From the IMG/VR virus record IMGVR_UViG_3300044680_000280, positions 248,001-312,000 of that record: a stretch of DNA of 64,000 nt; one strand, given 5' to 3'. A program made the position numbers and the translations under genes. Shown piece by piece: positions 32,174 to 59,601 of the stretch; positions within the stretch are counted from its first letter, which is position 1, and the number at the start of each line of letters is the position of its first letter. The notes under the pieces are model-generated. The model did no database searches and was not told the origin of the DNA. It saw only the letters and a program-made list of their open reading frames with translations.

Positions 32174-32482
32174 TCAGCCATCGGAATCAATTGGCTCTAT
32201 CGACTCCTCGCTGGTTGACAGCATGTGATCCCACACGGACTGACGCTTCTCGAGGGATTCCAACCCGCACTTTGAATCCAAAGCGAATTTCTGGCTGGAG
32301 GTGAGCATGAGCTTGGCTGATGTCTTCTTTTCGCTCTCCCAGAGCCAGAGAGACATCTTGATCTCGAGCTTGGCTTTCGGGGCGTACAGAAAACCCTTCT
32401 CGGACGCCTCTTGAGCCAGTTTTCTCCACACTTGTTCGAAAACGCGTTTGACCTTAAGTCGGTTATCGTTGAAAAGACCCAC
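32174..32482 (-). CDS. hypothetical protein with C-terminal WDHML tag
   Basis: KRQSVWDHMLSTSEE near C-terminus. Confidence 0.65.
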   Translation of the reverse strand: MGLFNDNRLKVKRVFEQVWRKLAQEASEKGFLYAPKAKLEIKMSLWLWESEKKTSAKLMLTSSQKFALDSKCGLESLEKRQSVWDHMLSTSEESIEPIDSDG

Positions 32483-32485
32483 GGG

Positions 32486-33160
32486 TCACCGAGACTTCGC
32501 CCAATCGACGAGCTCCTGCGTCACGATTCGCATGTTCTCCTCGGTCATGGGTTTCAGGGGGAGCTTGAACAGGACAACGCCCGATTCCTCTTCGCATGCG
32601 TCCGCAACGATGAGGGGCGACGAATGATTCTTGTTCGTCGAGACGGTTAGGACAACGCTCTCCCGCTCACCCGGCTTCTTTTCCAGGATGTAGCAAACGT
32701 CGGTCATGTGATCGTTTTCATGCGGGAAGAGTGTTCCCTTGAGACCCGAGGCCATGAAGACATCCGAGACGATATTGACCATGCCAGCCCTTCCGTCTGT
32801 AACTACACCGAATTTCGTCTTTGCCCAATCGATAAGTCGTTGAGCCGACATCAACGCATTCGCTAGATTGAGCTCCTCGTGTGGGAAGTCTCGCAGTGTC
32901 GCCCCCGATCCTTCCAGGGTGATCTCGGAACCCAACACGCGTTCCGCACTGTCGGCGTCAGGACGGTAGAGCTTTGCTCCGACCTTGTAGATCGAGAGGA
33001 CGACCCGTGCCGTTCGCCCGTGCGAATCAGCCAACATTTGGGGGAGGACATACCAGAGCGTCCAGTAATCAGAGTCGTGACCCTGATGCAGCTCGATTCG
33101 TCCTCCCAGCCCTGAATCCTCGAACACCTGCCACGCGGAGTCGGCAATGTCGTTCTGCAC
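32486..33160 (-). CDS. hypothetical protein (paralog of 33208-33546)
   Basis: GTG 10 nt after GGTGTA; C-terminal VTQELVDW. Confidence 0.7.
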   Translation of the reverse strand: MQNDIADSAWQVFEDSGLGGRIELHQGHDSDYWTLWYVLPQMLADSHGRTARVVLSIYKVGAKLYRPDADSAERVLGSEITLEGSGATLRDFPHEELNLANALMSAQRLIDWAKTKFGVVTDGRAGMVNIVSDVFMASGLKGTLFPHENDHMTDVCYILEKKPGERESVVLTVSTNKNHSSPLIVADACEEESGVVLFKLPLKPMTEENMRIVTQELVDWAKSR

Positions 33161-33207
33161 TATTTTAGTTTACACCGGATAGTGCCCGCATGCATCTACA
33201 GAAAAAA

Positions 33208-33546
33208 TCAAGCAAATGCGGGCTTTTGGTGGCACAACTTCCACCAGTCGACGAGCTCTTGCACGACCTCTTTGACCGCGTCGACGCTTATCGTGCGGGC
33301 CCGAATCGACTTCAGAACCTTCCCCGTCTGGTCGTCGTAGACCACCGCCGAGACGATCTTTAGAGGGCTCATCGAGATCCCACACAGAGTGTATTCGGAC
33401 GGAGCCTCACCCCCGAGCCGTAGATACGGCATTTTGAAGGTGAGGCACACGTACGAACTCGTGCTAGAGGACCACTGGTTCAAACTTCGACCGAAGCCCG
33501 CTTCCCGGAGCATTTCTTCGGCGATTTTGCTTTCTTTCTTCCACAT
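33208..33546 (-). CDS. hypothetical protein (paralog of 32486-33160)
   Basis: C-terminal VVQELVDW. Confidence 0.65.
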   Translation of the reverse strand: MWKKESKIAEEMLREAGFGRSLNQWSSSTSSYVCLTFKMPYLRLGGEAPSEYTLCGISMSPLKIVSAVVYDDQTGKVLKSIRARTISVDAVKEVVQELVDWWKLCHQKPAFA

Positions 33547-33611
33547 GACGACATCCCACCCCCACGACGGGGTGAATGGTACACCGGAGGACTGACGTGC
33601 GCCCGTCCTTT

Positions 33612-33812
33612 TTAAAGCTCGCGCGATAGCGAGAGCTCTATCTCGATTCGGGACAACACGACGGTGACAGCCTCGTCCATGTCGATCTCGTCCTGTAGGT
33701 GCTGAGTCATTTCGGGTTGTGGTTCGACCGCTCTAAATTCTTGCTTTTCCATTGACTTTGTATCCTGGTGTTCTTTCGTCATTCCCGGAGGGAATAAGTT
33801 ATTACCAGACAC
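33612..33812 (-). CDS. hypothetical protein
   Basis: ORF in co-oriented run; start uncertain. Confidence 0.5.
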   Translation of the reverse strand: MSGNNLFPPGMTKEHQDTKSMEKQEFRAVEPQPEMTQHLQDEIDMDEAVTVVLSRIEIELSLSREL

Positions 33813-34044
33813 CCCAGCACATCGCGGCCGTCTCGACGAAGACGTTCGACTTCATCTGGACCTTCGACTGAGCCCCGATTCTGAAAAGCAGGGGCTCCTC
33901 CGGGTCGTCCGTCGCGACGATTAGCATGGAAAGGACTTGGGGCTTGTTGTTCGGCAGAAGGCCGATAAAGCGGTACGTCTTGGGTCCGTGGTAGAAGACG
34001 TCGCCCTGGTTGAGTTTCGAAGCCTGTTTTTCTTTGATGAGCAC
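33802..34044 (-). CDS. hypothetical protein
   Basis: GTG 34044 after AAGGAG; ASKLNQGDVF beta-rich pattern. Confidence 0.55.
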   Translation of the reverse strand: MLIKEKQASKLNQGDVFYHGPKTYRFIGLLPNNKPQVLSMLIVATDDPEEPLLFRIGAQSKVQMKSNVFVETAAMCWGVW

Positions 34045-34048
34045 CGGG

Positions 34049-34306
34049 TCACTCCTTGGGCGTTTCGCCCGCTGCACTGAGCCACGTGTCGAGCCTCGTC
34101 GAGTTCGTGAAGTTGCGCATGACGTCGCTACGGACGCGACGGACTTTGCTTGCCTGGCTCGTCGTCTTTTTACCCGTCGCAAGCAGACGCCGAGCCGCTT
34201 TTCGTCGGTTACGGTCGTTTCGCCACTCGGCGGTAAGTTCGTGATTTTCGTCGAACTTCACGGGGCGACTCATGTGTAAAACCTGAAGGGCGGTCTTGAT
34301 GTCCAT
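34049..34306 (-). CDS. basic hypothetical protein
   Basis: GGTGTA 10 nt before ATG. Confidence 0.65.
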   Translation of the reverse strand: MDIKTALQVLHMSRPVKFDENHELTAEWRNDRNRRKAARRLLATGKKTTSQASKVRRVRSDVMRNFTNSTRLDTWLSAAGETPKE

Positions 34307-34350
34307 TCCCCATTATTACACCGGAGACACCCCGGACTCAGCCAGAAAAA

Positions 34351-34536
34351 TCAGTCGATGACGAGCAAGGTCTCCAGTTCGTGGGTCACCCCGTCGCGGG
34401 GCTGTGCCCACTTGTGGTTGCACTCTGGGCACTGCTTGATGAGGCGGTCCCGCTTGACGAGTCGGAGCTCGATCTTTTCCGCGGGGCAGTGGCATTCGGG
34501 GCAGTGTGCGTCTGTGGCCATGTTCGTTTCCCTCAC
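34351..34536 (-). CDS. zinc-ribbon protein
   Basis: CPECH...CPECNHKW. Confidence 0.7.
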   Translation of the reverse strand: MRETNMATDAHCPECHCPAEKIELRLVKRDRLIKQCPECNHKWAQPRDGVTHELETLLVID

Positions 34537-34615
34537 CCTAGTAGAACGGAAGGAGCCCAGGAACCTTTACCTTGAGCTCCTATTTGGTCAGAATGCTCGG
34601 TACGCCGAGACAGCC

Positions 34616-34861
34616 TCAGGCCACCTTCACGGCTGGCATCGAGGGCACCGTGGGGCGATCGTTCGGGCCACGACGGCTCTCTTCGAGCAACTTGAGGAGC
34701 TCCGCCTTGTTGATCTCTCGCGTCGGGCGAAACGGGGGAGCCTGAATCTCTACGACATTCGCGAAAGCAACGAGGGCGTCTTCAATTGAGTCGAATGGCT
34801 CATCCAGTCCGACCACGGGCTCGAGTTTGTCGATCTGGTCCAGGGTGTCTTCGGCTTCCAT
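34616..34861 (-). CDS. hypothetical protein
   Basis: GAGG upstream; class-2 promoter TTGAAC-N16-CGTACT at 34884-34911. Confidence 0.65.
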   Translation of the reverse strand: MEAEDTLDQIDKLEPVVGLDEPFDSIEDALVAFANVVEIQAPPFRPTREINKAELLKLLEESRRGPNDRPTVPSMPAVKVA

Positions 34862-34930
34862 TGTGATCTACCTCTTGCAAGATAGTACGGCCGGTCAGAA
34901 GCGAAGTTCAATAGCCGGCGGACAAAAACG

Positions 34931-35164
34931 TCACACTAACGTTTCTTTCAAGCTTTCGATCCTGGCTACCGCACGACCCCCCTGAAGGAGGAGCACCCGC
35001 TTCTCGCCTCGTTTCATGGCCTCGAAAAATGCCGACCACGCGTCCCGCTCCGATAGGTTCTCGTGTAGGAGAACGTCGTTTACAATGACGGTGAAAATCG
35101 ACCTATCGATAGGCGGGGGTACGCTGACTCTGAAAACTCGTCTCCCGCTTCCCCTACGCCGCAT
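34931..35164 (-). CDS. hypothetical protein (paralog of 35880-36104)
   Basis: FTVIVNDV...ERDAWSAFF...RVLLL. Confidence 0.6.
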   Translation of the reverse strand: MRRRGSGRRVFRVSVPPPIDRSIFTVIVNDVLLHENLSERDAWSAFFEAMKRGEKRVLLLQGGRAVARIESLKETLV

Positions 35165-35169
35165 GCCTC

Positions 35170-35457
35170 CTAGCTTAGCAGTTCAGGAGGGGTCCAGCGA
35201 GGTTGTTCCTTGTTTTGGGGCTCGGGGAGCGGAGCGTCACTCTCGGGAACGAAGACCTTGAAGGCACCGAATTTGGTTTCCATCGTGGTCCAAAGAACCC
35301 GGATGACGTAGTCGTCGCCGAGAGCGGGGACATTGACCTCGAAGTGCGACTTCAGCACCTTGGTGACCGTGCCATTAAGGGCACCGCTGACGAACTTTTG
35401 GCAAACCCGGACGGTCTGCCCTTTGTTGACCACTTGGACGGTTTTGGGGTCACTCAT
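35170..35457 (-). CDS. hypothetical SH3-like protein
   Basis: GGAG upstream; VNKGQTVRV. Confidence 0.65.
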   Translation of the reverse strand: MSDPKTVQVVNKGQTVRVCQKFVSGALNGTVTKVLKSHFEVNVPALGDDYVIRVLWTTMETKFGAFKVFVPESDAPLPEPQNKEQPRWTPPELLS

Positions 35458-35638
35458 TTTTCTTCTCCTTCAAAATGGGCGGATACTTCGAAGACTTCCT
35501 CGGAACCTCCTCCTCCTCGATCGGGGGAACCACCTTTCCGAGGATGTGGGCCACCAGAGCTCGCGCGGCCTTGAACTTTTGGCTCGATTCTCGACGTTCG
35601 GCTTCTCTAGCCGGAGCTTTCGGCCACTCGTCACTCAT
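35450..35638 (-). CDS. hypothetical protein
   Basis: MSDEWPK..., fits operon packing. Confidence 0.5.
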   Translation of the reverse strand: MSDEWPKAPAREAERRESSQKFKAARALVAHILGKVVPPIEEEEVPRKSSKYPPILKEKKNE

Positions 35639-35649
35639 CGGTTTCACTC

Positions 35650-35883
35650 TCACCCCCGCGAGGGTGCCCCCTTGCGCTTTCGGTTCGGTCTTGCTGTCCG
35701 CACAAACGACTTCATGAACACTTTTGCCCACCTTTCGGGAATGACCCGAGCGTTTGGACCTTTACCCTGGACCGCATTGAGCGCCAGGTCAAGCACGGAA
35801 CCGTGGATACGATTCACGTGCGTCCAGTGGCCCTGAATTGAACCCTCCCTCTTTGCCTGTCGGCGACTCGTGATCTCGTTCAC
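35650..35883 (-). CDS. hypothetical basic protein
   Basis: GTGA overlap with upstream stop. Confidence 0.45.
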   Translation of the reverse strand: MNEITSRRQAKREGSIQGHWTHVNRIHGSVLDLALNAVQGKGPNARVIPERWAKVFMKSFVRTARPNRKRKGAPSRG

Positions 35884-36104
35884 GGACGGTCCCCCATTTG
35901 AGCGAGGGGACGCCCGTTTCGCAAAAGTCGAACCCGTCGATCCTGCCGGATCGACGCAAAGAACGACGCCCAGGCTTCCTTCTCGCCGAGCTCTTCGCCC
36001 TTCACGACATCGTCCACGATGACCGTGTAATCGCGAAACACTTCCTTCTCCGGCATTTGATGCTCCAGACGGGAAAGCTCCCGCCACTTGTTCTTGGTAC
36101 CCAC
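35880..36104 (-). CDS. hypothetical protein (paralog of 34931-35164)
   Basis: YTVIVDDV...EKEAWASFF...RVRLL; upstream promoter has both TTGAAC and GGTGTA. Confidence 0.65.
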   Translation of the reverse strand: MGTKNKWRELSRLEHQMPEKEVFRDYTVIVDDVVKGEELGEKEAWASFFASIRQDRRVRLLRNGRPLAQMGDRP

Positions 36105-36141
36105 GGTTATAGTACACCGGTCAGGGGTAGAAGTTCAAGGT

Positions 36142-36501
36142 TCAGGCGTCGTTCGTGACGAGATCCGTTCGAATCGTCAGGTCGAACGGGGACTCCGCAG
36201 CGAGGACTTCCCGGGGTAGGCTGTACGTGTCGGCCAAAGTCATGTTGACCATCGAAAGGAGAGCTCGCTGGGGGAAGACGATGCTGTACGTCAGCAGGGC
36301 CTGGCGTGGACGGCCGAACTGGTCGGCGTCCACGTTCGCAGACTTCATCCACGCCTCGAGCCAGGCGACGTACGCCGGATGGCCCATATCGGTGTAGCCC
36401 TCAAGCACGATGTTTCGGCAGAGGTCCTTCAGCTCCTGCATCTCTTCGTGGTTCATGTAGGGTTTGAACAGGAGGGTCGTCGAGTCCACTTCGTAGCTCA
36501 T
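36142..36501 (-). CDS. hypothetical protein
   Basis: GGAGA upstream; overlap with upstream stop. Confidence 0.6.
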   Translation of the reverse strand: MSYEVDSTTLLFKPYMNHEEMQELKDLCRNIVLEGYTDMGHPAYVAWLEAWMKSANVDADQFGRPRQALLTYSIVFPQRALLSMVNMTLADTYSLPREVLAAESPFDLTIRTDLVTNDA

Positions 36502-36926
36502 TGTTCGTTCTCCGTTGGGGTTGGATTCGTGGAAGGGGCTCCGCATGTGCATGAATCGCAAATCTCGCACACATAGAGCCCGTGATCGTTACAGGAAATG
36601 GGAATGGCACACGTTAGGGCGAGGCGCCGCTGGCAGCCGATCGCGTGCTGTCGAGCCTTTTCGCAGACGCACTGAATGAGCTGGCAGTCACAGTCCGCAA
36701 CTCGACCGACGGCCATGTACTCGTCCAATGACATTTTGCCAAGAACCTTGTAGACACCGTTTTCATCGGGGATATCTGAAAAAAGTATAACCTCGGTACC
36801 GTCATGCGACGCCCCGTTTATGGCCCGAATCAACTCCTGGTACGGTCCCTCTTCGGGTATGGATCCCTCTTCGGGTATGGATCCCTCTTCGGGTATGGAT
36901 CCCTCTTCGGGTATGGGGTCAGACAT
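36498..36926 (-). CDS. Cys-rich hypothetical protein with N-terminal IPEEG[SP] x4
   Basis: Tandem repeat plus CDCQLIQCVC...CEICDSCTC. Confidence 0.65.
   Translation of the reverse strand: MSDPIPEEGSIPEEGSIPEEGSIPEEGPYQELIRAINGASHDGTEVILFSDIPDENGVYKVLGKMSLDEYMAVGRVADCDCQLIQCVCEKARQHAIGCQRRLALTCAIPISCNDHGLYVCEICDSCTCGAPSTNPTPTENEQ
36847..36916. repeat. 18-bp tandem repeat, about 4 copies
   Basis: CCCTCTTCGGGTATGGAT x3 plus a 16-bp fourth copy. Confidence 0.95.
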
Positions 36927-37410
36927 CGAGACAGTCGATTCGCCACCGGGTCAAACGGCAAATATCCCCCTCTGAGTCGCTCATGAGACTGAGGAGCAGG
37001 CCTTCTCCGAGGCTTGTTCGCATCTTGATGTTCTCAATGCACTGGCTCGGAGTGAGAAAAATCTTGCCGTACGGCACGGTGGGTGAATCGACTGACTCAA
37101 GCCCGGCAAGCCAATCGAGCCAACGTTTCCGCTCGGCATCGAGATCGACACTTTTGGTCGGGGGCGTAGGACGGTACTCGCTCCCGTACGCCGTCAGGAT
37201 GACTCGAGACGGGCCCGTCATGTCGACGGGGGTACAGGTCGTTTGGCTCCTGTCGAGCCAAGCCTGGGGCGTCTCGTCGCCCGCTTGACCCATGGCGAGG
37301 TATCGGGCCATTTCCTCCGTCTCCGCCAGGATGACGAGACCGAGCGTTTTGTTGGGCGCGTCCTCGACGGGACCGATGAGTTCGAGATGCCAGAGCTCCA
37401 TGAATTCCAT
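36919..37410 (-). CDS. hypothetical protein
   Basis: GGTGTA at 37414-37419; start may be ATG 37401. Confidence 0.65.
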   Translation of the reverse strand: MEFMELWHLELIGPVEDAPNKTLGLVILAETEEMARYLAMGQAGDETPQAWLDRSQTTCTPVDMTGPSRVILTAYGSEYRPTPPTKSVDLDAERKRWLDWLAGLESVDSPTVPYGKIFLTPSQCIENIKMRTSLGEGLLLSLMSDSEGDICRLTRWRIDCLDV

Positions 37411-37412
37411 CC

Positions 37413-37565
37413 TTACACCGGAGAGGGGGGCTCAACCGCCCCTTTTTTGCCCTCGAGTATCCGTTTCACACGAAGCTCCCGCTGGGCCAGCTTGAGCAAG
37501 ATCTCCATCACCGCGAGTTCGAGCCGATCGTACTCCCTGTTGGCTGAGGTCGAGATGCTCTCCAT
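37413..37565 (-). CDS. small hypothetical protein (not in ORF track)
   Basis: MESISTSANREYDRLELAVMEILL..., fills the gap between co-oriented genes. Confidence 0.5.
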   Translation of the reverse strand: MESISTSANREYDRLELAVMEILLKLAQRELRVKRILEGKKGAVEPPSPV

Positions 37566-37568
37566 GTG

Positions 37569-38045
37569 TTAGTTCGCGTGACGTATTCTGACCGCACCGT
37601 TCATTCCACCACATTCGGAGAACATGTCCGGTGGCCAGCGCCGCACCGCCTCTTCGACGGCATCCCTCCACGTGCCCGTGTTGATCCCCGCGTACTCTTC
37701 AGCGGTCGTGGATTCTCCGTTGAATCCACTGACAAAGAAAAGCCACGGACCGGCGGCTTCGTCGGAATGCTTTGCCAAAAGGGCGTCCTTAACTTGCTGT
37801 TTGGTTTCCGCCAAACGACGAGGAGCCTCCTCCTCTTCCCTCTTTTTGCGAGCCCTCTCAGTTTGAGCTTGTTTTTCCCGGTGGAGCCGATCTTCGCGCA
37901 ACGTGTTGCGGAACTCCGCCATTCTCCGGGTCAGAACCTCGAGACGACGTCTCACGGGCCCATCTACAGCAGGCACCGTCTCATCCAAGAACTGCACCAG
38001 GACGTCGTAATCCTCCTCATTCAACTGCTGAAGCTTCTTCGCCAT
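37569..38045 (-). CDS. coiled-coil hypothetical protein
   Basis: Long ORF; GAGTGAG upstream. Confidence 0.65.
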   Translation of the reverse strand: MAKKLQQLNEEDYDVLVQFLDETVPAVDGPVRRRLEVLTRRMAEFRNTLREDRLHREKQAQTERARKKREEEEAPRRLAETKQQVKDALLAKHSDEAAGPWLFFVSGFNGESTTAEEYAGINTGTWRDAVEEAVRRWPPDMFSECGGMNGAVRIRHAN

Positions 38046-38051
38046 GATCTC

Positions 38052-38522: not shown

Positions 38523-38821
38523 CAATGATCCCCCGCGGGACCGGCACGGTACCCGGCCGATCTGATCCAAAAATGTCTGACCCCCTGATCGATGGTCGCA
38601 CTCGTCGCAGTGAAGTACTCGACCGCATACTTCAACACATCCGGCTCGAAGTCGCAGGAGTCGGGGTTGATGCAAGCGTTGATCGGCCCCTTTGGGTCCT
38701 CTCGGTTTTCAACGAGACTGAACGCCGACCGAAGGATCGTGTTCTCGACGAGCATCCTCGTTGCAAACGTAGGGGCGGCGTCCGTAACCATCTTCAAAAC
38801 CGCGAGACTGATTCGTTCCAT
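38522..38821 (-). CDS. hypothetical protein
   Basis: Class-2 promoter 6 nt before ATG. Confidence 0.65.
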   Translation of the reverse strand: MERISLAVLKMVTDAAPTFATRMLVENTILRSAFSLVENREDPKGPINACINPDSCDFEPDVLKYAVEYFTATSATIDQGVRHFWIRSAGYRAGPAGDH

Positions 38822-38827
38822 GTCAGC

Positions 38828-38855: not shown

Positions 38856-38899
38856 CCGAAATCGACAGCTCTACCGAACGGTGTCACCGCCCAATTCTC

Positions 38900-52205: not shown

Positions 52206-52212
52206 TCCTCCC

Positions 52213-53068: not shown

Positions 53069-53764
53069 GTCCCCAGCCTGGGGACAACCTGGGTGTTGCC
53101 TCAAACCCGCCCGTTGCACGACATGTACAACACCACGAATTCATGTCATACATTTTGACACACCTGAACAACGGTTCCCCTCGAGCGATAGGCACTGAAC
53201 AGAGACCCTCGTTCAGTAGCTGAACATAAATACAGCACTGTTCGCACGGTTGGTTCAGTGCCACCTGTCCGCGAAGCGGGACAGGTGCGAGCTGGAGGCG
53301 AGCTCCCACATATCTCGAGGGTAATGCCGTATTCGCTTGACTTTGTCATGACCGAGTTTCTTAAGCGTGTTGAGGCACATCCCCAAAAGAAATCAAGCTC
53401 TTCCGCCGAAGGACGGACCGATTTATTCCTCCGGGATTCGAAATCCCAACTCATCCGTGGGCTTGACCTCTACCATGAGTGGAGGGAACCTACCTTCGCC
53501 CTGCTTCGCGGGCCCGTGGTAGACGGTTAGATGGTTCGATGGACCGACGGGGTGATGGGTAGATGGATCGACGGGGTGACCGGAGAGCGTACCGCGAGAT
53601 TCCCCTAGCCGCACCGGTTCGAATGGTTAAGCTTGCCAGTAAGGGTATCAAGCTTCCTTTGGGGAGCCCCTAGAGGGGTCGGCCTTGCTCTTGAGGTTGG
53701 CCCTTCGCCATTTCCAGCCCTGCTTCGCGGGCATGTAGAATGGTGGGTGGTGTATACTGGAGTC

Positions 53765-54001
53765 ATGTTCAATCCGTCCTCACCTGAGGTCAAGGTGTGC
53801 GGGGAGGCGGGTCAGCGACTGTATGACAAACTTGAGGCGGAGGGGGTCTCTCTGATGGCGGTCGGGGTGGGCGTCAGTTGGAACGGACAGCAGCCTGCGA
53901 TCCACCTGATGCTTGTCCGGAGCACGGACAGACCGATTCCTGAGACCTTTGAGGGGTACGAAGTCCACTGTCGCGTCACGGGGCGGATTGTGCCGCTGTG
54001 A
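53765..54001 (+). CDS. small alpha/beta protein (homolog of 57340-57576)
   Basis: GGTGTA 10 nt upstream; AVGVG...IP..FEGY.V...VTGRIVPL. Confidence 0.7.
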   Translation: MFNPSSPEVKVCGEAGQRLYDKLEAEGVSLMAVGVGVSWNGQQPAIHLMLVRSTDRPIPETFEGYEVHCRVTGRIVPL

Positions 54002-54073
54002 CGGTACGGGCTGAAACATTTACGTTTGTAAAAAAGCCCGAACTCTTAAAACCCCCATGGTGTACTAAAAGAG

Positions 54074-54598
54074 GTGGAGCCTTTACACGGTGGACTCCTA
54101 GATGAGAGGAATTTTAGAGACCGCGGCTCGGTCCCCTTCGAACTCGACGAGCCGGTACAGGTTGAGGCTGTGGGAGGGGAGAGTTGGGAACTACCTACGG
54201 GAAAGTACTACATTAAAATGGTTAGATATTACCTCAGGATTGAAACCGTCGTCCTAGAGGCAGCACCTCTCTCTGTAGCGGAGCTGGAAATCGTTATCGC
54301 TAAAAACTTCGAGGAACGATGCTCGCTCACACGTAGAGTAGACGGTCGTATTTTAAGCCGTACATGTGAGTTCAAACACCCTACACAATTGGGAGAATTC
54401 CTTTACGGCCCTAAATGCATCCAACCTGGGTGTAATGGGGTCATCTCCTCATTTACCTTCGAAGCGGAAGAACAGATCTCCCTGTGTCCCAAACATACAA
54501 CTCCTAAAGGTTCATTCCACTTAGGAGCTGACGATGACGATGACGATGACGATCAAAAACCTCCACGTTACGACCGCATGAGAAGGCAATTCCAATGA
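54074..54598 (+). CDS. hypothetical protein with Cys/His motif and poly-Asp
   Basis: GGTGTA 9 nt before GTG; CIQPGC...CPKH. Confidence 0.6.
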   Translation: MEPLHGGLLDERNFRDRGSVPFELDEPVQVEAVGGESWELPTGKYYIKMVRYYLRIETVVLEAAPLSVAELEIVIAKNFEERCSLTRRVDGRILSRTCEFKHPTQLGEFLYGPKCIQPGCNGVISSFTFEAEEQISLCPKHTTPKGSFHLGADDDDDDDDQKPPRYDRMRRQFQ

Positions 54599-56001
54599 GT
54601 GGCCAAGTCACCGAAGCCGTTTACCAAACGCCAGAGCCGAACACACCTATCGTGCTCTACGAAGGTGACATGGAGCTCAAACAGGGAGACGGTGAAAGCG
54701 AGACACACATCTGGGGTAAAGGTAGGATCACTTACCACTGGCAACCCACACCGAGTATTGAGTGGGAGCTGCCTATGGAAAAGTATATAGGCCGTCCAAA
54801 GTTCGAGAACTGCACAATAACCATCCCCTCACGTTTCTGTGTATTTCCGGCTTACGTATCCCGAATTAGACCTGGTAAGGTTTCTGGCGATGCAATTGAA
54901 GCGGTACTATCCAACCATAATTGGTACTCACCCAAAGTTCAACAATTGCGGTTACATATACCCAATTTTCTCACCGATCGGTGGGGTTCTTGGATTGCTG
55001 CACCGAATGAACATTGCGAGTACGCTGGGCGAACTAAAGTTGAACTATCCGACTGGACACTGACTTTGGACTTGTTGGGGCATATTCCTCGGAATCGTAG
55101 AGATGGGGGACATATGGTCACCCATGTTATGGTCGTTGAGCGACCCGATAATTCGGAATTCGACCCGAACATGGCGAGGGAGCTTGTGGAGTCCCTGTAC
55201 AGTGTCTTCTCTTTCTGTACGGGGCAAGCTACGGGTGCAGTGCTTGTGACGGGGCACAACCTGATGGGTCAAGTTTGCTGGAAATGGTGGCGTACCCTTC
55301 ATATCGACGCCTACCAATCTCGTACCACATGGCTTCCGTCTGATTACAAGGGGGCGGGCACTCAACATCATCCTTCTTTCTCAAGACAAGATGCTTTTAA
55401 AGCGCTTTTACGCGGCTTCACGGAGGTAACCTCGATTTCTCCTATCGCCCGTCGTACCCTTTCTACCTGTGTGTATTGGTATTTGAAGGCACGAGATCAA
55501 TCTGTTGAGAGTGCCGTGATCTTCTCAGTTCTTATCCTGGAGACTCTGACATGGTTCGACAGCGTCATCACTCACGGTGAGGACCCCAACGCCTTTGAAG
55601 CTTCTCCAGCCAAGGTGTCTGCGTATTTGGAGACTCTTGAGATACCTCATGATGAGCTGTACGAAGGTCAGGGCGCTATCGAGCGTCTTATTGAGATGCG
55701 AGACACAATGACGCATCCGCCAAAAGGAGGGGATTTCAAAGAGTACCCTGACATAATGCGAGATCACGTCCTCGCCTTGTATCTGATGGAGAGGGCCTTT
55801 CTAAGAGTCTTGGGCTACAACGGGTACATGTTCGATCGCAGGACCGGCCGAGACGTTGTGGTGGGTGTCCTGCCAGAACCACCCACCGTTAGTGGAGAGG
55901 AACTAGAAGAGATAAGACAGAACAGGATGAGAGGACCTCAGCAGGTCGGGGAACACGAGTGGCATATAGGGGGCCCCATCGACCAGTCTCGTAAGCCCTG
56001 A
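54595..56001 (+). CDS. ApeA/YopA-like protein with putative C-terminal HEPN RNase
   Basis: Beta-rich N-terminus, helical C-terminus with R-x4-H motif RDTMTH; AT-richer DNA. Confidence 0.5.
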   Translation: MSGQVTEAVYQTPEPNTPIVLYEGDMELKQGDGESETHIWGKGRITYHWQPTPSIEWELPMEKYIGRPKFENCTITIPSRFCVFPAYVSRIRPGKVSGDAIEAVLSNHNWYSPKVQQLRLHIPNFLTDRWGSWIAAPNEHCEYAGRTKVELSDWTLTLDLLGHIPRNRRDGGHMVTHVMVVERPDNSEFDPNMARELVESLYSVFSFCTGQATGAVLVTGHNLMGQVCWKWWRTLHIDAYQSRTTWLPSDYKGAGTQHHPSFSRQDAFKALLRGFTEVTSISPIARRTLSTCVYWYLKARDQSVESAVIFSVLILETLTWFDSVITHGEDPNAFEASPAKVSAYLETLEIPHDELYEGQGAIERLIEMRDTMTHPPKGGDFKEYPDIMRDHVLALYLMERAFLRVLGYNGYMFDRRTGRDVVVGVLPEPPTVSGEELEEIRQNRMRGPQQVGEHEWHIGGPIDQSRKP

Positions 56002-56031
56002 CCATTTAAACCCTCGGTGTAATGCCTCTCC

Positions 56032-56493
56032 ATGGATCTCGACACTCTTCTAGCTCACCTTGAGAGCACGGCGGGCGTTAGCGGGACCAGCCTACACCCG
56101 GACGACTGGCAATGGTCCGAGTTGTTCAGGGATTACCTGGGGAAGCACTCACGGGTCTTTCGGGGATGTCCGTGCATCGGTACGGAGGCGACGACAGGAC
56201 AGTGTCACCGTAAGAGCGCCGAGTGGGCTCGAGAGCACGGCGGAACTTTTTGGTCCGGCTACGCCCTTTCCGAGGGGGAGTGGGTAACGCACTCGTGGGC
56301 GGTGCACCGAGGTTCTCTTGTGGTGGAATGCACTCCGATTGCACGGACGGTGTACGTTGGTGTGAGACGACTATTGACAAGGCGGGAGCTCATCGGGAGT
56401 CGTCTCAATGTCGGTCCCTCCGTGTTGGAGACGGTGGAAGAGCGACGCCTGCGGAAGCGGTTAGCTGAACCGTCCTTTACCTCATGTCCTTAG
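56032..56493 (+). CDS. hypothetical protein with possible Cys-His catalytic motif
   Basis: GQCHRKSA...GYALS.GEWVTHSW; GGTGTA 10 nt upstream. Confidence 0.6.
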   Translation: MDLDTLLAHLESTAGVSGTSLHPDDWQWSELFRDYLGKHSRVFRGCPCIGTEATTGQCHRKSAEWAREHGGTFWSGYALSEGEWVTHSWAVHRGSLVVECTPIARTVYVGVRRLLTRRELIGSRLNVGPSVLETVEERRLRKRLAEPSFTSCP

Positions 56494-56524
56494 GGCGTCT
56501 GACCCCTCGGGAAGCAACCGCGGT

Positions 56525-56740
56525 TTGGGGACAAACATAGTTGACCTTTGGCTTCCGACGGTTAGGATTTGCTATATGGGTCCGCGCGATCAGAACCGGC
56601 CGGATGGTTACCCCATCGACCAGAAGTTCGACGAGGCCGCGAGCCGCGTGCTCAAAGATCGGCGCCTCGATGAGGAGAAGGCCGACGACTTTCTCCGCGA
56701 GATGGAGAAGCGCCTGCGAGCCGCCCAGAAGAAGGGTTGA
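56525..56740 (+). CDS. small hypothetical protein
   Basis: ORF ends in the terminator hairpin; start uncertain. Confidence 0.45.
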   Translation: MGTNIVDLWLPTVRICYMGPRDQNRPDGYPIDQKFDEAASRVLKDRRLDEEKADDFLREMEKRLRAAQKKG

Positions 56741-56759
56741 GCTGCCCGGCTCAACCCTT
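56732..56759. terminator. perfect 11-bp hairpin between convergent genes
   Basis: AAGGGTTGAGC-N6-GCTCAACCCTT. Confidence 0.65.
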
Positions 56760-56805
56760 AGGGGTCCGGGCGACGTAGACGCCCGTGCATTCGGGGATCG
56801 ACCCT

Positions 56806-57078
56806 TCATGAGTCATGAGTGACCTCCTCAGTCAAAAGGTGTTCCCAATGGTTCATGCGGGGTTCTGTAGGTTGTGAGCTGGAGGGGGCATCAGGTACGT
56901 AAACATCGATCTGGCAGCGGCTAGAATCAGCCTCATCTTGAAGCAAGAGGACGACTCGTCCTTGTACTTCCCACTCCCACCCCGACCCGAATTCGGCGGA
57001 TGCCACCCCGCGGATCGTAACCCAGGAGCCGATGTTCGGGCGGACACCGTCAGGGATGGGCATCGTGAATCTAGGCAT
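56806..57078 (-). CDS. small beta-rich protein with WEHLL tag
   Basis: GGTGTA 12 nt before ATG 57078; ends PRMNHWEHLLTEEVTHDS. Confidence 0.7.
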   Translation of the reverse strand: MPRFTMPIPDGVRPNIGSWVTIRGVASAEFGSGWEWEVQGRVVLLLQDEADSSRCQIDVYVPDAPSSSQPTEPRMNHWEHLLTEEVTHDS

Positions 57079-57142
57079 CGTTCTTACCCCTACACCGGGT
57101 CCTTGGAGGGCGGTTATGACGGAACTGACTTGACCCATCGGC

Positions 57143-57313
57143 TCAGTTGGGTCGGAAGGCCCTCTTGACCATGGGGATCTCTAGCAGTCCTTCGGCCTCG
57201 TAGTTGGGTCCTTGGAGGGCGGGCCCTTTACATGCGGGCTGGCAGATCGGGTTCTTCTGTCGGGCCGGGAGTGTTCGTCTACAGAAGAGGCATCGAGGGG
57301 TGCGAGAACGCAT
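57143..57313 (-). CDS. small zinc-finger protein (not in ORF track)
   Basis: MRSRTPRCLFCRR...ICQPAC; GGTGTA at 57330-57335. Confidence 0.5.
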   Translation of the reverse strand: MRSRTPRCLFCRRTLPARQKNPICQPACKGPALQGPNYEAEGLLEIPMVKRAFRPN

Positions 57314-57339
57314 GCGGGGTAGGCATTACTACACCGTAG

Positions 57340-57576
57340 TTACAGCGCACGGATGTTGCCCACGGCGTTAATCATGACTCGAACTCCATTCACGGCGGGA
57401 GGGACCGCTGCTCGTACTTCATCGCTCATGACGTCGACGTTGACTTTGACGCAGTAATTCCCCGACTCGCCCGCGATTCCGATGCCACGCAGCCAGTGAG
57501 GATGCCCAAGCTTCTCTTTCAGAGTCGCCTTGGCATGCTGTGCTTGCACCAGGGCGGTCTCGTCTCGACTGTTCAT
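57340..57576 (-). CDS. small alpha/beta protein (homolog of 53765-54001)
   Basis: RGIGI...VKVNV...VPPAVNGVRVMINAVGNIRAL. Confidence 0.7.
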   Translation of the reverse strand: MNSRDETALVQAQHAKATLKEKLGHPHWLRGIGIAGESGNYCVKVNVDVMSDEVRAAVPPAVNGVRVMINAVGNIRAL

Positions 57577-57653
57577 CCCGGACGCAGCACATAAGTAAAT
57601 CCAGGTTTGAACTTCGCCCCTCCTTGGGCGGTACTTTCCGTTGAAAGGCGGGT

Positions 57654-58055
57654 ATGAGGATGCACCGTGTTGTTTTCATCGAGAAGAGCGGCAAGTCGGG
57701 CTCGGCGTCGTTTCCCACCCTCCACATTGCGACGATGTACGCGAGGACTGTCAAGAGCGGCAAAGTCGTGGAGGGCGGGACGGACGAGCTCACGTCGGTC
57801 GCAGTGGTCAAGTGCGAGGCTCCCGAGATCGTGAATGCGAAGAGGCAGATCCTGAACGAGTCCATTCTCAGGGAGCATGCGGCGGAAGCCTACATGGAGG
57901 CGGGAACGGAAACGCGCCTCCTGGGCGGGTCGACGTCGGAAGCCTTGGACAATGCCAGCTCGGCTCGAGCCCAGGTCATGCGTAACCTGTGCGCATGCGG
58001 CAAGTCCTGCCCGATCGGCATGAGCGTTTGCTACTCGTGCCGTCGGTATCGGTAG
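57654..58055 (+). CDS. hypothetical protein with C-terminal zinc finger
   Basis: TTGAAC-N17-GGTACT at 57607-57635; CACG...CYSC. Confidence 0.65.
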   Translation: MRMHRVVFIEKSGKSGSASFPTLHIATMYARTVKSGKVVEGGTDELTSVAVVKCEAPEIVNAKRQILNESILREHAAEAYMEAGTETRLLGGSTSEALDNASSARAQVMRNLCACGKSCPIGMSVCYSCRRYR

Positions 58056-58117
58056 CCGTTTGCAAAGTGACGGAACACGGGCTCGATCCAAGGTCGTGCC
58101 GGTGTAAGAGATTGAGG

Positions 58118-58555
58118 ATGAGAAAGTCGTATGAGCAACGGCGGGCGGCGAGAGCGGACAGATTCGTCGCGTCTCTTACGGACGAGAGCGAGTTTTTCGG
58201 CCTAATCGGCGCGGGTTGTCCCGACTCCTTCTACCGGATCTACGTTCGACTCACGAAGGAGTCTCGAACGTGGTGGCGCTTCGAGGTTGGAGCGGGTCCG
58301 TCGAGCATCAATCCGATCAAGCGTCAGGGCAACATGAACGTAGCGGATCGGGCGGTAGCGATGTGGGGACCTATTCCGTTCCTCGCCGATTACACCTACG
58401 ATCCCGAAAAGCTTTCAATTGCCAAGTTCAACTCGAGGAGCCTAGTCATACAGCCGAGTTTGAACCCGATGTTGCGCCGACAGAAGAAAAACGTTCAATC
58501 TACGAACATATACTCGATCCAGGCCAGGGCCTCCTCAACGGTGGAACTGGCGTGA
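58118..58555 (+). CDS. hypothetical protein
   Basis: GGTGTA 11 nt before ATG 58118. Confidence 0.6.
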   Translation: MRKSYEQRRAARADRFVASLTDESEFFGLIGAGCPDSFYRIYVRLTKESRTWWRFEVGAGPSSINPIKRQGNMNVADRAVAMWGPIPFLADYTYDPEKLSIAKFNSRSLVIQPSLNPMLRRQKKNVQSTNIYSIQARASSTVELA

Positions 58556-58938
58556 TTTGCCAGCTCCGCGGCACGGATGGTTCGTTGGACGAGCTCTTCC
58601 AGGAGAAACTCAGAGTCATCGACATCCGACGTGCCGATGACGACGTCAACGACATAAACCCCTTCCGAGACGGTTAGACGGTCCCATCGTCCGAAGTGGT
58701 TGCCGGGTATTGAGGGGATGACGACGCACGATGAGCCATCCTCGGATACCCGTAGACCGACATCTCGGCTATAGTTGAAGTCTCCATTGTGATCCACTTG
58801 GAGGTTTCGTAGCCGTAGAGGCGGAAGCACAACGTTACCCTCCATCTCCATCCCACGGGGAAGCGGTCCAGCATTACGAAGAGCCGCTTCGCGCTCTTCT
58901 ACAGCTCTGGCGTAAGAAACTTGGAGGGAGTCGGGCAT
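58495..58938 (-). CDS. hypothetical protein
   Basis: GGTGTA at 58956-58961. Confidence 0.6.
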   Translation of the reverse strand: MPDSLQVSYARAVEEREAALRNAGPLPRGMEMEGNVVLPPLRLRNLQVDHNGDFNYSRDVGLRVSEDGSSCVVIPSIPGNHFGRWDRLTVSEGVYVVDVVIGTSDVDDSEFLLEELVQRTIRAAELANHASSTVEEALAWIEYMFVD

Positions 58939-58965
58939 GGGGTTGTTACCTTTCTTACACCGGCC

Positions 58966-59601
58966 TCACGTGAGCTCCTCGTCGGGCGCCATCATGTGGT
59001 CATAGACCGTAGTTCTGTTTTTCCTCTCTCGCTTCTTCCGTTGGTGGGGGAACGCAAGGGGCCAAGCCCCGTTGAGGTCGTACCGTACGAAGGGTTCGTT
59101 GTACGAGGGCATGAGCGGGTGTCTCGGTTGGCCGTCTAGGAGAAGGTCTCCGATATGTCCCACTTCGACTTCGATGGAGAGCTCGTGTGCTCGAAGCATG
59201 AGCTGGAACTCTTGTACTCGTCGATCGACGTGGGCGCGGCATTTGGCGGAGCCCCAGCCGAGGACGACGCGGCACACGTTTTTGTTGTAGAGAGCCGCCG
59301 CGAGATAAGAGTTCGTTTTAGGTCCTACTGCGAACCCGTAGTCCAGTTCGGCAAGGGTGCTGGGGTTGCGGTTGCGATAGGCGAAGAGGTTTTGGATTTC
59401 GAACGAGCCGAAGCCCCATCGGGAGGCGAAGCCGAAGCATTTGCGGACCGTGGCATCGTCTTGGAGGACGTCCGCCGTGCTCGGGTTCAGGAGTACGAAG
59501 AGACACTTCAGAGTTGGACCCCATGTTCGGGTCAACGAGTAGCGGTATATACCGTCTTCCGATAGAACCGCGTCCCTTTGGCATCGAGCTAATGTGGGCA
59601 T
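58966..59601 (-). CDS. DUF1643 family protein with appended YDHMM tag
   Basis: YRYSLTRTW, FVLLNPSTAD...DDATVRKC, NLFAYR, HPL; ends RTTVYDHMMAPDEELT. Confidence 0.85.
   Translation of the reverse strand: MPTLARCQRDAVLSEDGIYRYSLTRTWGPTLKCLFVLLNPSTADVLQDDATVRKCFGFASRWGFGSFEIQNLFAYRNRNPSTLAELDYGFAVGPKTNSYLAAALYNKNVCRVVLGWGSAKCRAHVDRRVQEFQLMLRAHELSIEVEVGHIGDLLLDGQPRHPLMPSYNEPFVRYDLNGAWPLAFPHQRKKRERKNRTTVYDHMMAPDEELT

What the first reader, a model, noticed from the sequence alone, without database searches (positions are those of the whole stretch)
32174..59601. Shared C-terminal 'KKSVWEHLL-acidic' tag on at least 9 different proteins: a candidate phage-encoded addressing system
Read directly from the translations: KRQSVWDHMLSTSEE (32174-), PKKSHWEHVLEEVAE (39926+), PKKSVWEHLLEED (44211-), PKKSVWEHMLEDEG (44515-), PKKSLWEHLSEDDTDAV (44945-), PRKTVFDHLLGESE (46152-), PSKSVWEHLLEDG (47110-), PRMNHWEHLLTEE (56806-), NRTTVYDHMMAPDEE (58966-). 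Weaker variants: THWFDRVL (61420-), PRYDRM (54074+). Consensus: basic-basic-[ST]-x-[WFY]-[ED]-H-hydrophobic, then an acidic tail, within about 20 residues of the stop. The carriers lie on both strands over 27 kb and have different bodies: RHH-like regulators, a DUF1643 protein, a beta-rich protein, an acidic protein. Paralogy may account for the 44-47 kb copies but not for the rest. Inference: a portable short amphipathic-helix motif that docks clients on one hub, such as RNA polymerase/sigma, a protease adaptor (degron), or a compartment-import or virion-packaging receptor.
Basis: partly seen in the sequence, partly recalled or inferred. Interest (0 to 1): 0.92.

Follow-up and report, generated by a model that had tools for sequence, protein, structure and literature searches.

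The report
Shared end-tag on megaphage proteins
About thirty otherwise unrelated small proteins of one 463-kb bacteriophage carry the same 14-residue peptide, nearly always at their very end, which looks like an address label read by one still unidentified partner.

Summary
All nine C-terminal tags are at the stated coordinates. The two "weaker variants" do not fit the motif.

- **Extent:** the window is part of a phage contig of at least 463 kb. Walking 177 kb of it gave 29 instances, all inside one ~104-kb island of small ORFan genes. 26 lie 7-19 residues from the stop, one is N-terminal and two are internal.
- **Consensus:** E-P-[RK]-[KR]-[ST]-[VI]-W-[ED]-H-[LIM]-[LM]-acidic x3.
- **Level of selection:** synonymous codons vary freely, so selection acts on the peptide, not on a DNA repeat.
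- **Chance:** shuffled proteins give 0.1 C-terminal hits against 8 counted (9 real) (P about 2e-13).
- **Carriers:** the bodies are unrelated, soluble and mostly acidic. The 120 nearest DUF1643 homologues lack the tag.
- **Distribution:** no other genome or protein in the large collections searched carries a near-consensus tag.

It is best read as a portable docking or addressing peptide for one shared receptor, probably phage-encoded. The receptor is not identified. I favour cargo sorting to a phage-built assembly, as with T4's capsid targeting sequence. Rivals are recognition by an AAA+ ATPase encoded inside the island, a J-domain protein at its edge, or a host hub.

The parts
32174..32482 (-). 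Carrier 1 (102 aa ORFan). Tag core at 32210-32251 (...EKRQSVWDHMLSTSEE...), W is 19 residues from the stop. This is the leftmost tag of the island.
   Evidence: matrix score 38.9 bits
39926..40633 (+). Carrier 2 (235 aa, pI 4.5 ORFan). Tag core at 40583-40624 (...EPKKSHWEHVLEEVAE*).
   Evidence: 43.2 bits
44211..44510 (-). Carrier 3 (99 aa ORFan). Tag core at 44214-44255 (...PPKKSVWEHLLEED*). Last gene of a run of five tagged genes.
   Evidence: 44.7 bits
44515..45039 (-). Carrier 4 (JGI aa, starting MPSEDTDR). Tag core at 44521-44562 (...SPKKSVWEHMLEDEG*).
   Evidence: (P0124); 44.4 bits
44945..46150 (-). Carrier 5 (401 aa, pI 4.6 ORFan). Tag core at 44960-45001 (...EPKKSLWEHLSEDDTDAV*). Its body is weakly similar to carrier 6.
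   Evidence: 41.7 bits
46152..46868 (-). Carrier 6 (238 aa ORFan). Tag core at 46158-46199 (...EPRKTVFDHLLGESE*).
   Evidence: 38.0 bits
47110..47628 (-). Carrier 7 (172 aa; JGI aa, P0001). Tag core at 47113-47154 (...EPSKSVWEHLLEDG*).
   Evidence: 39.7 bits
56806..57138 (-). Carrier 8 (110 aa ORFan). Tag core at 56824-56865 (...EPRMNHWEHLLTEEVTHDS*).
   Evidence: 39.5 bits
58966..59622 (-). Carrier 9: DUF1643 enzyme-like body (Pfam 1.2e-30) plus a ~40-residue extension that carries the tag. Tag core at 58981-59022 (...NRTTVYDHMMAPDEELT*).
   Evidence: 34.3 bits. The body has high pLDDT; the tail has pLDDT 52-59.
58135..58677 (+). Doubtful tenth instance (…EEKRSIYEHILDPG…, core 58483-58524), 58 residues before the stop. 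The ORF overlaps the called gene 58495-58938(-).
   Evidence: 15.9 bits; body coding score near zero
29059..30258 (-). J-domain protein (399 aa; HPD motif, then a Pro-rich linker and a ~290-residue unknown domain) at the left edge of the tag island. A candidate receptor only.
32174..64000 (.). The part of the tag island inside the window. The island runs on for about 72 kb past the window end (contig positions ~280,174 to ~383,990) and holds 19 further tagged ORFs and a classical AAA+ ATPase (L046:18982-20343).
   Evidence: No tag in window 1-32,000, in ~29 kb upstream of the window, or in ~12 kb beyond the island.

Best explanation
The block E-P-[RK]-[KR]-[ST]-[VI]-W-[ED]-H-[LIM]-[LM]-[ED]-[ED]-[DE] is a portable docking peptide selected at the protein level: an address tag. 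A proline-, glutamate- and lysine-rich flexible linker joins it to at least 29 unrelated, soluble, mostly acidic ORFan proteins. These are encoded in one ~104-kb accessory island of a phage of at least 463 kb. The hydrophobic positions (V/I, W, L, L/M) and the nearly invariant His would sit in a groove of one common receptor, and the basic upstream flank and acidic downstream flank would steer binding. Because no near-consensus tag turned up in any other genome or protein collection searched, the receptor is most likely encoded by the phage itself. My preferred specific reading is cargo sorting. The tag would deliver the phage's arsenal of small effector-like proteins to an assembly the phage builds. 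The most likely destination is the prohead interior, so that the proteins are injected with the DNA, as with the T4 internal proteins, which share only a capsid targeting sequence. Shown: the motif, its enrichment, selection at the peptide level, portability, terminal position on a flexible tail, and restriction to one island and one lineage. Inferred: that it binds anything, which receptor it binds, and the destination. I put the general claim (docking tag for one shared partner) at about 0.85, and the specific claim (cargo sorting to a phage-built assembly or virion) at about 0.35, which is the number given.
For: Enrichment: 8 C-terminal hits counted (9 real) against 0.10 expected, P = 2e-13. 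Matrix scores are 12.5-48 bits against a shuffle maximum of 13.5 bits, and 27 of the 29 exceed that maximum. Peptide-level selection: synonymous codons are scrambled at every conserved position. Portability: tag-masked bodies are unrelated apart from two pairs. The 120 nearest DUF1643 homologues score at most -0.4 bits and end ~10-15 residues after their PRHPL motif. Position: W lies 7-13 residues from the stop in 25 of 29 instances and 19 in one more (26 of 29 within 19). One copy sits at an N-terminus, followed by the same acidic stretch and a Pro-rich linker, and one sits between two Pro-rich linkers. Linker: Pro is 11.7% against 5.9% in the bodies. The AlphaFold2 model of the DUF1643 carrier has a confident body (most 10-residue blocks at pLDDT 79-97) and a detached tail at pLDDT 52-59. 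Carriers have no transmembrane segment and mostly pI 4.5-5.9. Lineage restriction: degenerate DNA pattern scans of IMG/VR, JGI metagenomes and 185,579 genomes found no other genome with real tags. A word search of 5.8 billion proteins found only the query itself. A profile search of 1.84 billion representatives found only the phage's own protein plus two repeat-protein artefacts. Clustering: all 29 tags lie in a ~104-kb island of the 177 kb scanned, which holds few recognisable enzymes; none lie in ~73 kb of flanks. [quoted passage not shown]
Against: No receptor was identified and no binding was tested. No virion, scaffold or capsid gene was recognised in the 177 kb scanned, so nothing links the tag to the head. 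The T4 targeting sequence is N-terminal and is cut off by the prohead protease. Here the tag is C-terminal, and no conserved cleavage site separates it from the body; the common E-P step is a poor protease site. The carriers lie in arrays of small genes on both strands that look like early or accessory genes, not late genes, although timing was not determined: the sigma-70-type promoter scan gave no more hits than chance. Mostly acidic cargo would be unusual beside packed DNA. Only 38% of the genome was examined. The profile search has little power for diverged tags, so lineage restriction is shown only for near-consensus copies.
Confidence: 0.35

Rival explanations
1. The tag is the recognition signal for the phage's own classical AAA+ ATPase (453 aa, L046:18982-20343), which is encoded inside the island. 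Its ~200-residue N-terminal domain would bind the tag. The ring would then unfold, extract or translocate the client, for example to remove early effectors on schedule or to pass them through a barrier. This works like the MIT domain of Vps4 binding C-terminal MIM helices of ESCRT-III subunits, or like degron-adaptor systems.
For: The ATPase has Walker A GPPGTGKS, Walker B VLLDDID and an aromatic-hydrophobic-Gly stretch (FWG) where pore loop 1 lies. Pfam AAA scores 4e-12. The best solved relatives are the p97/Cdc48/VAT ATPase domains at about 1e-14. NCBIfam gives partial matches to PAN, Cdc48 and FtsH. Its gene starts 0.8 kb after a tagged gene, and tagged genes lie on both sides. Its N-terminal domain has no known family and is therefore lineage-specific, as the tag is.
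Against: Co-location is weak evidence: the island holds roughly 200 genes. No protease partner and no HbYX-type C-terminus were seen. The single-sequence AlphaFold2 model is unusable (pLDDT 37), so nothing is known about the N-terminal domain. Similar AAA domains in other phages are annotated only generically.
Confidence: 0.2
2. The tag docks the carriers on a host hub protein such as the sliding clamp, RNA polymerase, SSB or a protease adaptor. This is host-takeover by motif mimicry, as with the hydrophobic-and-acidic C-terminal clamp-binding epitopes shared by T4 gp43, gp55 and gp33.
For: [quoted passage not shown] Small acidic ORFans in accessory islands are typical host-interaction proteins (general knowledge).
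Against: About thirty different clients for one host site is far more than any known phage case. A strict pattern scan of one genome for each of 185,579 species found no host-like proteins with the tag. No recognisable replication or transcription protein in the 177 kb scanned carries it. The motif does not match the bacterial clamp (QL[SD]LF) or SSB-tip consensus (my knowledge). The host is unknown.
Confidence: 0.2
3. The tag marks clients for the phage J-domain protein (window 29059-30258). Its C-terminal domain would bind the tag and its J-domain would hand the client to host Hsp70 for folding or remodelling.
For: It is a bona fide J-domain with an HPD motif, followed by a Pro-rich linker and a ~290-residue unknown domain. 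The gene sits 1.9 kb from the first tagged gene, at the island's left edge. Fast-evolving ORFans may need folding help.
Against: Only proximity supports it. The Pfam J-domain score is below the curated cut-off (21.7 against 27.8 bits). Acidic flanks are disfavoured in direct DnaK-binding peptides (my knowledge). Phage matches cover only the J-domain.
Confidence: 0.08
4. The tag is a ubiquitin-like-protein interaction motif of the LIR/AIM type. The hub would be a small beta-grasp protein activated by the phage's E1-like enzyme, so clients are recruited to whatever that protein is attached to.
For: Position 0 is only W, F or Y and position +3 is only L, I, M or V in 29 of 29 instances. That is the canonical LIR core [W/F/Y]-x-x-[I/L/V] (PMC5538626), and the p62 LIR core shares W-x-H-L. 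The phage encodes a JAB-like protein, a 95-aa ORF and a ThiF/E1-like protein side by side, about 10-11 kb before the window.
Against: The four-residue core is very degenerate. LIRs have acidic residues upstream, whereas here the upstream flank is basic. The 95-aa ORF matches no family and ends ...PFGSV, not Gly-Gly. The JAB hit is just below its cut-off. The trio lies ~42 kb from the nearest tag.
Confidence: 0.05
5. There is no functional tag. The similarity would come from recent duplication of gene 3' ends, from a repeated DNA element translated by accident, or from chance.
For: The five adjacent carriers at 44.2-47.6 kb have the most similar tag DNA (72-82% identity). Two bodies there are weakly similar. 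Five tagged ORFs have near-zero coding scores.
Against: Synonymous sites are scrambled while the amino acids are kept, including serine codons from both families. Bodies are unrelated. Shuffles never reach the observed scores. Position relative to the stop codon is tightly kept.
Confidence: 0.03

Closest known systems
Capsid targeting sequence (CTS) of T4-type internal proteins (IPI, IPII, IPIII, Alt)
   Same: A short conserved peptide is the only thing shared by a diverse, fast-evolving set of small phage proteins in a variable locus. It is specific to a phage lineage and portable to foreign proteins (PMC3012670).
   Different: The CTS is N-terminal and is removed by the prohead protease. Here the tag is C-terminal in 26 of 29 cases with no evident cleavage site. 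There are about 30 clients instead of a handful. Packaging is not shown here and no sequence relationship was shown.
Sliding-clamp-binding C-terminal epitopes of T4 gp43, gp55 and gp33
   Same: A hydrophobic plus acidic C-terminal segment on a divergent flexible linker, shared by unrelated proteins and interchangeable, docking on one hub (PMC2988020).
   Different: The clients there are polymerase and transcription factors; here they are ORFans. No clamp gene was seen in the 177 kb scanned. The number of clients is ten times larger.
Encapsulin cargo-loading peptides and microcompartment encapsulation peptides
   Same: Short terminal peptides on flexible linkers, usually C-terminal but sometimes N-terminal, address unrelated cargo to the inside of a protein shell (my knowledge).
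   Different: The consensus sequences differ: Gly/Ser/Leu-rich for encapsulins, against the W-x-H-hydrophobic core with charged flanks here. No shell gene was identified here.
LIR/AIM motifs binding Atg8-family ubiquitin-like proteins
   Same: The core [W/F/Y]-x-x-[L/I/V] fits every instance. The p62 core is W-T-H-L.
   Different: The upstream flank is basic here, not acidic. That is a eukaryotic system. The candidate phage ubiquitin-like protein is unproven.
C-terminal degrons such as the ssrA tag
   Same: A short C-terminal peptide that gives many proteins a common fate.
   Different: ssrA-type recognition needs the free terminal carboxylate and terminal hydrophobic residues. Here the residues after the core vary in length (3-14) and are acidic, and the tag also occurs N-terminally and internally.

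Membership tests
T4-type capsid targeting sequence | Located at the N-terminus of the precursor | tested here: not met
   26 of 29 instances are 7-19 residues from the stop; only one is N-terminal.
T4-type capsid targeting sequence | Followed by a prohead-protease cleavage site that frees the mature protein | tested here: inconclusive
   No conserved site lies between body and tag. The linker is variable, and the common E-P step is a poor protease site. The hydrophobic-x-Glu pattern after the core is expected for any acidic tail.
T4-type capsid targeting sequence | Carriers are found inside proheads and virions | not testable with these tools
   Needs virion proteomics. No structural genes were recognised in the 177 kb scanned.
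T4-type clamp-binding C-terminal epitope | Short hydrophobic and acidic segment at the extreme C-terminus on a divergent flexible linker | tested here: met
   compared with the description in PMC2988020.
T4-type clamp-binding C-terminal epitope | Carriers are replication or transcription proteins, and the phage encodes the clamp | tested here: not met
   Carriers have no Pfam or PHROG family except DUF1643. No clamp family appears among the window's Pfam hits or in the gene tables of the walked loci. 62% of the genome was not examined.
Encapsulin cargo-loading peptide | Terminal peptide on unrelated cargo, next to an HK97-fold shell gene, with a Gly/Ser/Leu-rich consensus | tested here: not met
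   A terminal peptide on unrelated cargo is present. The consensus is different, and no encapsulin or shell family appears in the gene tables. The consensus comparison rests on my knowledge.
LIR/AIM motif | Core [W/F/Y]-x-x-[L/I/V] | tested here: met
   29 of 29 instances, if Met is accepted at the last position; definition from PMC5538626.
LIR/AIM motif | Acidic or phosphorylatable residues upstream of the aromatic residue, and an Atg8-like receptor | tested here: not met
   Positions -4 and -3 are Arg or Lys in 21 and 14 of the 26 instances tabulated. The 95-aa ORF between the JAB-like and E1-like genes matches no family.
ssrA-type C-terminal degron | Recognition of the free C-terminal carboxylate with terminal hydrophobic residues | tested here: not met
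   Tails after the core are acidic and of variable length, and N-terminal and internal copies exist.
DUF1643 (carrier 9 only) | Match to Pfam PF07799 above its gathering score | tested here: met
   106.7 bits against a cut-off of 22.5. The tag is an addition absent from the 120 nearest homologues.

The most novel reading that the evidence does not exclude
A self-contained protein-sorting system encoded by a megaphage. A C-terminal signal peptide on about 30 (perhaps more) effector-like proteins is read by a phage-encoded receptor: a capsid or scaffold site, a compartment gate, or the island's AAA+ translocase. The phage would thereby address a whole arsenal of accessory proteins to one place or one fate. 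This would be the first linear sorting signal of this scale described in a bacterial virus.
Probability: 0.4. Interest if true: 0.9.

Novelty: new variant of a known kind. Interest (0 to 1): 0.75.

Why it matters
Huge phages carry hundreds of small genes of unknown function, and there is almost no way to group them. A shared address tag sorts about one gene in seven or eight of a 104-kb island into a single functional class from sequence alone. It also gives an experimental handle: a 14-residue peptide that should pull down its receptor and carry reporters to wherever these proteins go. If the destination is the virion, this would be a very large set of co-injected proteins, of interest for the arms race between phages and bacterial defences. 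If it is a compartment or an unfoldase, it would be a linear sorting or turnover signal, which has not been found for the known phage nucleus. The tag could also serve as a portable tool for loading foreign proteins.

Tried and rejected
1. **DNA repeat or mobile element.** Rejected, because synonymous sites are scrambled.
2. **Paralogy of whole genes.** Rejected, except for two pairs.
Rejected by the matrix.
4. **Relatives in other genomes.** Pattern scans of IMG/VR, JGI metagenomes and GTDB genomes gave only chance hits. A word search with the last 40 residues of one carrier found only itself. A profile search of 1.84 billion proteins found the phage's own protein and two repeat proteins. The 597-aa neighbouring protein has no homologue. 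The 462-kb uncultured phage LR756500.1 has 24% GC and is unrelated. Comparative genomics of the tag was therefore not possible.
5. **DUF1643 as a uracil-DNA-glycosylase-like fold.** I recalled this from memory, but it is not supported. There was no PDB sequence hit. Foldseek gave no match better than E = 0.012 and TM about 0.3.
6. **Structure of the AAA+ protein.** The single-sequence model is unusable (pLDDT 37).
7. **Membrane or secretion targeting.** Carriers have no hydrophobic segment. The motif lacks the hydrophobic stretch of Tat or Sec signals. The ABC ATPase (window 18859-19680) lies outside the island.
8. **Promoter and terminator scan of 39-49.5 kb.** No more hits than chance, so it gave no information on timing.
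9. **Literature searches.** No described shared terminal motif in jumbo phage proteins was found.

Full report
**Where the window comes from.** The window is positions 248,001-312,000 of IMG/VR contig IMGVR_UViG_3300044680_000280, which is 406,734 bp long. The same sequence, 100% identical over 20 kb, lies on a 463,523-bp JGI contig from another sample and on contigs from a Logan assembly. The window encodes:
- a DNA methylase, peptide deformylase, dCTP and dCMP deaminases, HNH endonucleases, a metallophosphatase, an ABC ATPase and an OmpA-like protein;
- an 836-aa VWA protein that is ~35% identical to proteins of Ackermannviridae.

I therefore read it as a very large phage of an unknown bacterial host. 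Megablast of 22 kb of the window found nothing in 50,697 phage records. A 597-aa neighbouring protein has no homologue among 5.8 billion proteins.

- Among 92 predicted genes, 8 hits were counted in the last 25 residues. The ninth carrier was mistranslated in that script. Residue shuffles give 0.10 (P = 2.4e-13).
- A position matrix built from the instances scores them 34-48 bits. Twenty shuffles of all 1118 window ORFs never exceed 13.5 bits.

**It is a peptide, not a DNA repeat.** The tags do appear as weak DNA repeats, at 72-82% identity for the most similar. The codon tables show that the amino acids are kept while the codons are not:
- the Ser/Thr at -2 is written with ten codons, from both serine families;
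- His is CAC 14 times and CAT 11 times;
- Arg at -4 uses all six codons;
- Leu uses six codons.

This is also the best available evidence that these ORFs are translated. Their codon-model scores are mostly positive but below the genome median, and five are near zero.

**The system is much larger than the window.** I walked the contig with exact-protein look-ups and pattern scans. This covered 177 kb, from contig positions ~219,000 to ~396,000.
- The matrix finds 29 instances. All lie between ~280,174 and ~383,990, which is window 32,174 to about 72 kb past the window end.
- There are none in the 61 kb before the island or the 12 kb after it. Those flanks hold many of the recognisable enzymes.
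- At about two genes per kb, roughly one island gene in seven or eight is tagged.

**Anatomy of the tag.** The tabulation at 26 instances gave E at -6 (10), P at -5 (17), R/K at -4 (21) and K/R at -3 (14). Over all 29 instances, the counts by position are:

| Position | Residues | Count |
|---|---|---|
| -2 | S/T | 28 |
| -1 | V/I | 21 |
| 0 | W / Y / F | 21 / 5 / 3 |
| +1 | E/D | 25 |
| +2 | H | 25 |
| +3 | L/I/M/V | 29 |
| +4 | L/M/V | 25 |
| +5 to +7 | mostly E/D | |

The stop codon most often follows at +8 or +9.
- The distance from W to the stop is 7-13 in 25 cases and 19 in one.
- One copy opens a 256-aa protein (L042:9968-10738), followed by the same acidic run and a Pro-rich linker.
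- One copy sits mid-protein between two Pro-rich stretches (L042:8861-9412).
- One doubtful copy is internal.
- The 20 residues before the core are enriched in Pro (11.7% against 5.9%), Lys and Glu.
- In the AlphaFold2 model of the DUF1643 carrier, built with 64 homologues, the body is confident. Residues 160-189 have pLDDT 52-59 with only a three-residue helix at the core. This is a folded body with a free tail.

The S/T-x-x-E pattern and the i, i+3, i+4 hydrophobic spacing fit a short capped amphipathic helix. The beta-branched and aromatic residues would equally allow strand addition. That point is inference.

**The carriers.**
- After masking the tag, only two pairs among 23 bodies are similar: 44945/46152 weakly, and two 49%-identical zinc-ribbon-like paralogues in L040.
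- Lengths run from 82 to 423 residues, most have pI 4.5-5.9, and none has a membrane segment.
- Pfam and PHROGs recognise nothing except DUF1643.
- The 120 nearest DUF1643 homologues end soon after their PRHPL motif and score at most -0.4 bits with the tag matrix. In this protein the tag is an add-on.
- The claim of RHH-like regulators has no support.

**Is the tag found anywhere else?** No near-consensus copy was found.
- Degenerate DNA patterns for the core found only chance matches, internal and without the flanks, in IMG/VR, JGI metagenome contigs and one genome for each of 185,579 species.
- A word search with the last 40 residues of one carrier returned only that carrier.
- A profile of 23 tags against 1.84 billion representatives returned one of the phage's own proteins and two proteins with internal repeats that add up chance matches.
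- A 25-position profile has little power in so large a library, so diverged tags elsewhere cannot be excluded.

**What it most likely does.** The data show a short peptide kept by selection. It is moved onto unrelated proteins, held on a flexible tether, nearly always at the end of the chain, and confined to one class of genes in one phage lineage. That is the signature of a docking or addressing signal read by a single partner.

Because the tag is lineage-specific, I expect the partner to be encoded by the phage. [quoted passage not shown] Those are described as a highly diverse set of defence proteins with only that sequence in common (PMC3012670). On that analogy I favour cargo sorting to a phage-built assembly, most plausibly the prohead.

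The weaknesses are plain: the tag is at the other terminus, no cleavage site is evident, no head genes were seen in the part examined, and the timing of expression is unknown.

**Candidates encoded nearby.**
- *AAA+ ATPase.* Inside the island lies a 453-aa classical AAA+ ATPase with Walker motifs and an FWG stretch at the pore-loop position. Its nearest solved relatives are p97, Cdc48 and VAT, and its 200-residue N-terminal domain belongs to no known family. It could read the tag in the way Vps4 reads the C-terminal helices of ESCRT-III subunits.
- *J-domain protein.* At the left edge of the island, 1.9 kb from the first tag, lies a J-domain protein with an HPD motif and a large unknown C-terminal domain.
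- *Ubiquitin-like set.* About 10-11 kb before the window lie a JAB-like protein, a 95-aa ORF and an E1-like ThiF protein side by side. The tag core fits the LIR regex [W/F/Y]-x-x-[I/L/V] used by partners of ubiquitin-like Atg8 proteins, but its flanks do not.

None of these links was tested. Each is a lead.

**Host-hub reading.** The T4 clamp-binding epitopes of gp43, gp55 and gp33 are hydrophobic and acidic C-termini on divergent linkers and can be swapped freely (PMC2988020). This is the same architecture. Against it stand the number of clients, their lack of any replication or transcription signature, and the absence of similar tags in the bacterial genomes scanned.

**Verdict.** The identity of the hub is open. 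I found no description of such a shared terminal motif in large phages. I rate it a new variant of a known kind of system, terminal addressing peptides on diverse cargo, with high interest because it is directly testable with a 14-residue peptide.

Noticed in passing
L044:12845-14117 (about 10-11 kb before window position 1): A JAB-like protein (129 aa), a 95-aa ORF ending ...PFGSV and a ThiF/E1-like protein (191 aa) lie side by side. They follow a 621-aa VWA_CoxE-like protein and a 305-aa ORF. This may be a phage-encoded ubiquitin-like conjugation set.
   Followed up: partly
L046:18982-20343 (about 54 kb past the window end): A classical AAA+ ATPase (453 aa; GPPGTGKS, VLLDDID, pore-loop-like FWG) with an unknown 200-residue N-terminal domain, inside the tag island. 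The single-sequence AlphaFold2 model failed.
   Followed up: partly
window 29059-30258 (-): A phage J-domain protein with an HPD motif, a Pro-rich linker and a ~290-residue domain of no known family. In other phages only the J-domain has matches.
   Followed up: partly
window 52120-52500 (+): This ORF ends ...PFEDDGIPF, like the C-terminal tip of bacterial SSB proteins, yet neither it nor the preceding ORF 51696-52157 matches any Pfam family.
   Followed up: partly
window 3195-4322 (-) and L049:1-516: Two sigma-like proteins. The first has a weak Sigma70_r2 hit and a hydrophobic-acidic C-terminus (...EEDVELAEENIFVSSMA). The second has Sigma70_r4 hits. The phage may direct its own promoter classes.
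   Followed up: no
window 34310, 37407, 43230, 57323: An 18-nt motif, CCATTATTACACCGGAGA on the + strand. Its reverse complement, TCTCCGGTGTAATAATGG, includes a start codon. It recurs at four minus-strand gene starts and may be a shared leader or translation-initiation element.
   Followed up: no
window 36846-36916: A perfect tandem repeat of an 18-nt unit (TCCCTCTTCGGGTATGGA), about four copies.
   Followed up: no
window 53521-53585 and 58668-58700: A GATGG-rich array with 8-nt periodicity in an intergenic stretch, with a related copy 5 kb away.
   Followed up: no
window 49439, 53497, 53716 (also 49802, 50073): A repeated GC-rich hairpin (CGCCCTGCTTCGCGGGC) between genes, possibly a terminator or processing site.
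   Followed up: no
window 39926, 44211, 44945, 46152, 61420, 62498 and others: Many proteins of the island begin MP[TS][ED] or similar (MPTEE, MPSEDT, MPTDSD, MPTVDD). This is a second, N-terminal regularity that may reflect start-codon context or N-terminal processing. The Shine-Dalgarno signal is weak (33 of 93 genes).
   Followed up: no
L040:2379-2675, 5883-6209, 7353-7715 (+): Three tagged ORFs were not called as genes in the JGI annotation. Two of them are 49% identical paralogues that start with a CPCCG zinc-ribbon-like motif, so the tag can be used to rescue missed genes.
   Followed up: partly
window 11111-17777 (+): An 836-aa VWA protein (PHROG 2426, E = 9e-180; ~35% identical to Ackermannviridae proteins) lies in a cluster with a 598-aa protein that carries an OmpA C-terminal domain. 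The function is unknown, also in the known phages.
   Followed up: no
L043, L044, L045, L047 (flanks and island): An unusual set of auxiliary genes: SET-domain protein, fatty-acid hydroxylase, nucleoside deoxyribosyltransferase, aminotransferase, Fe-S assembly proteins (NifU_N, Fe-S_biosyn), OMP decarboxylase, phosphoribosyltransferase, acetyltransferase and a tyrosine integrase.
   Followed up: no
window 59601-61394 (-): A 597-aa coiled-coil-rich protein with an internal duplication (72-nt repeat at 60539 and 60938, 86% identical) and no homologue among 5.8 billion proteins.
   Followed up: partly
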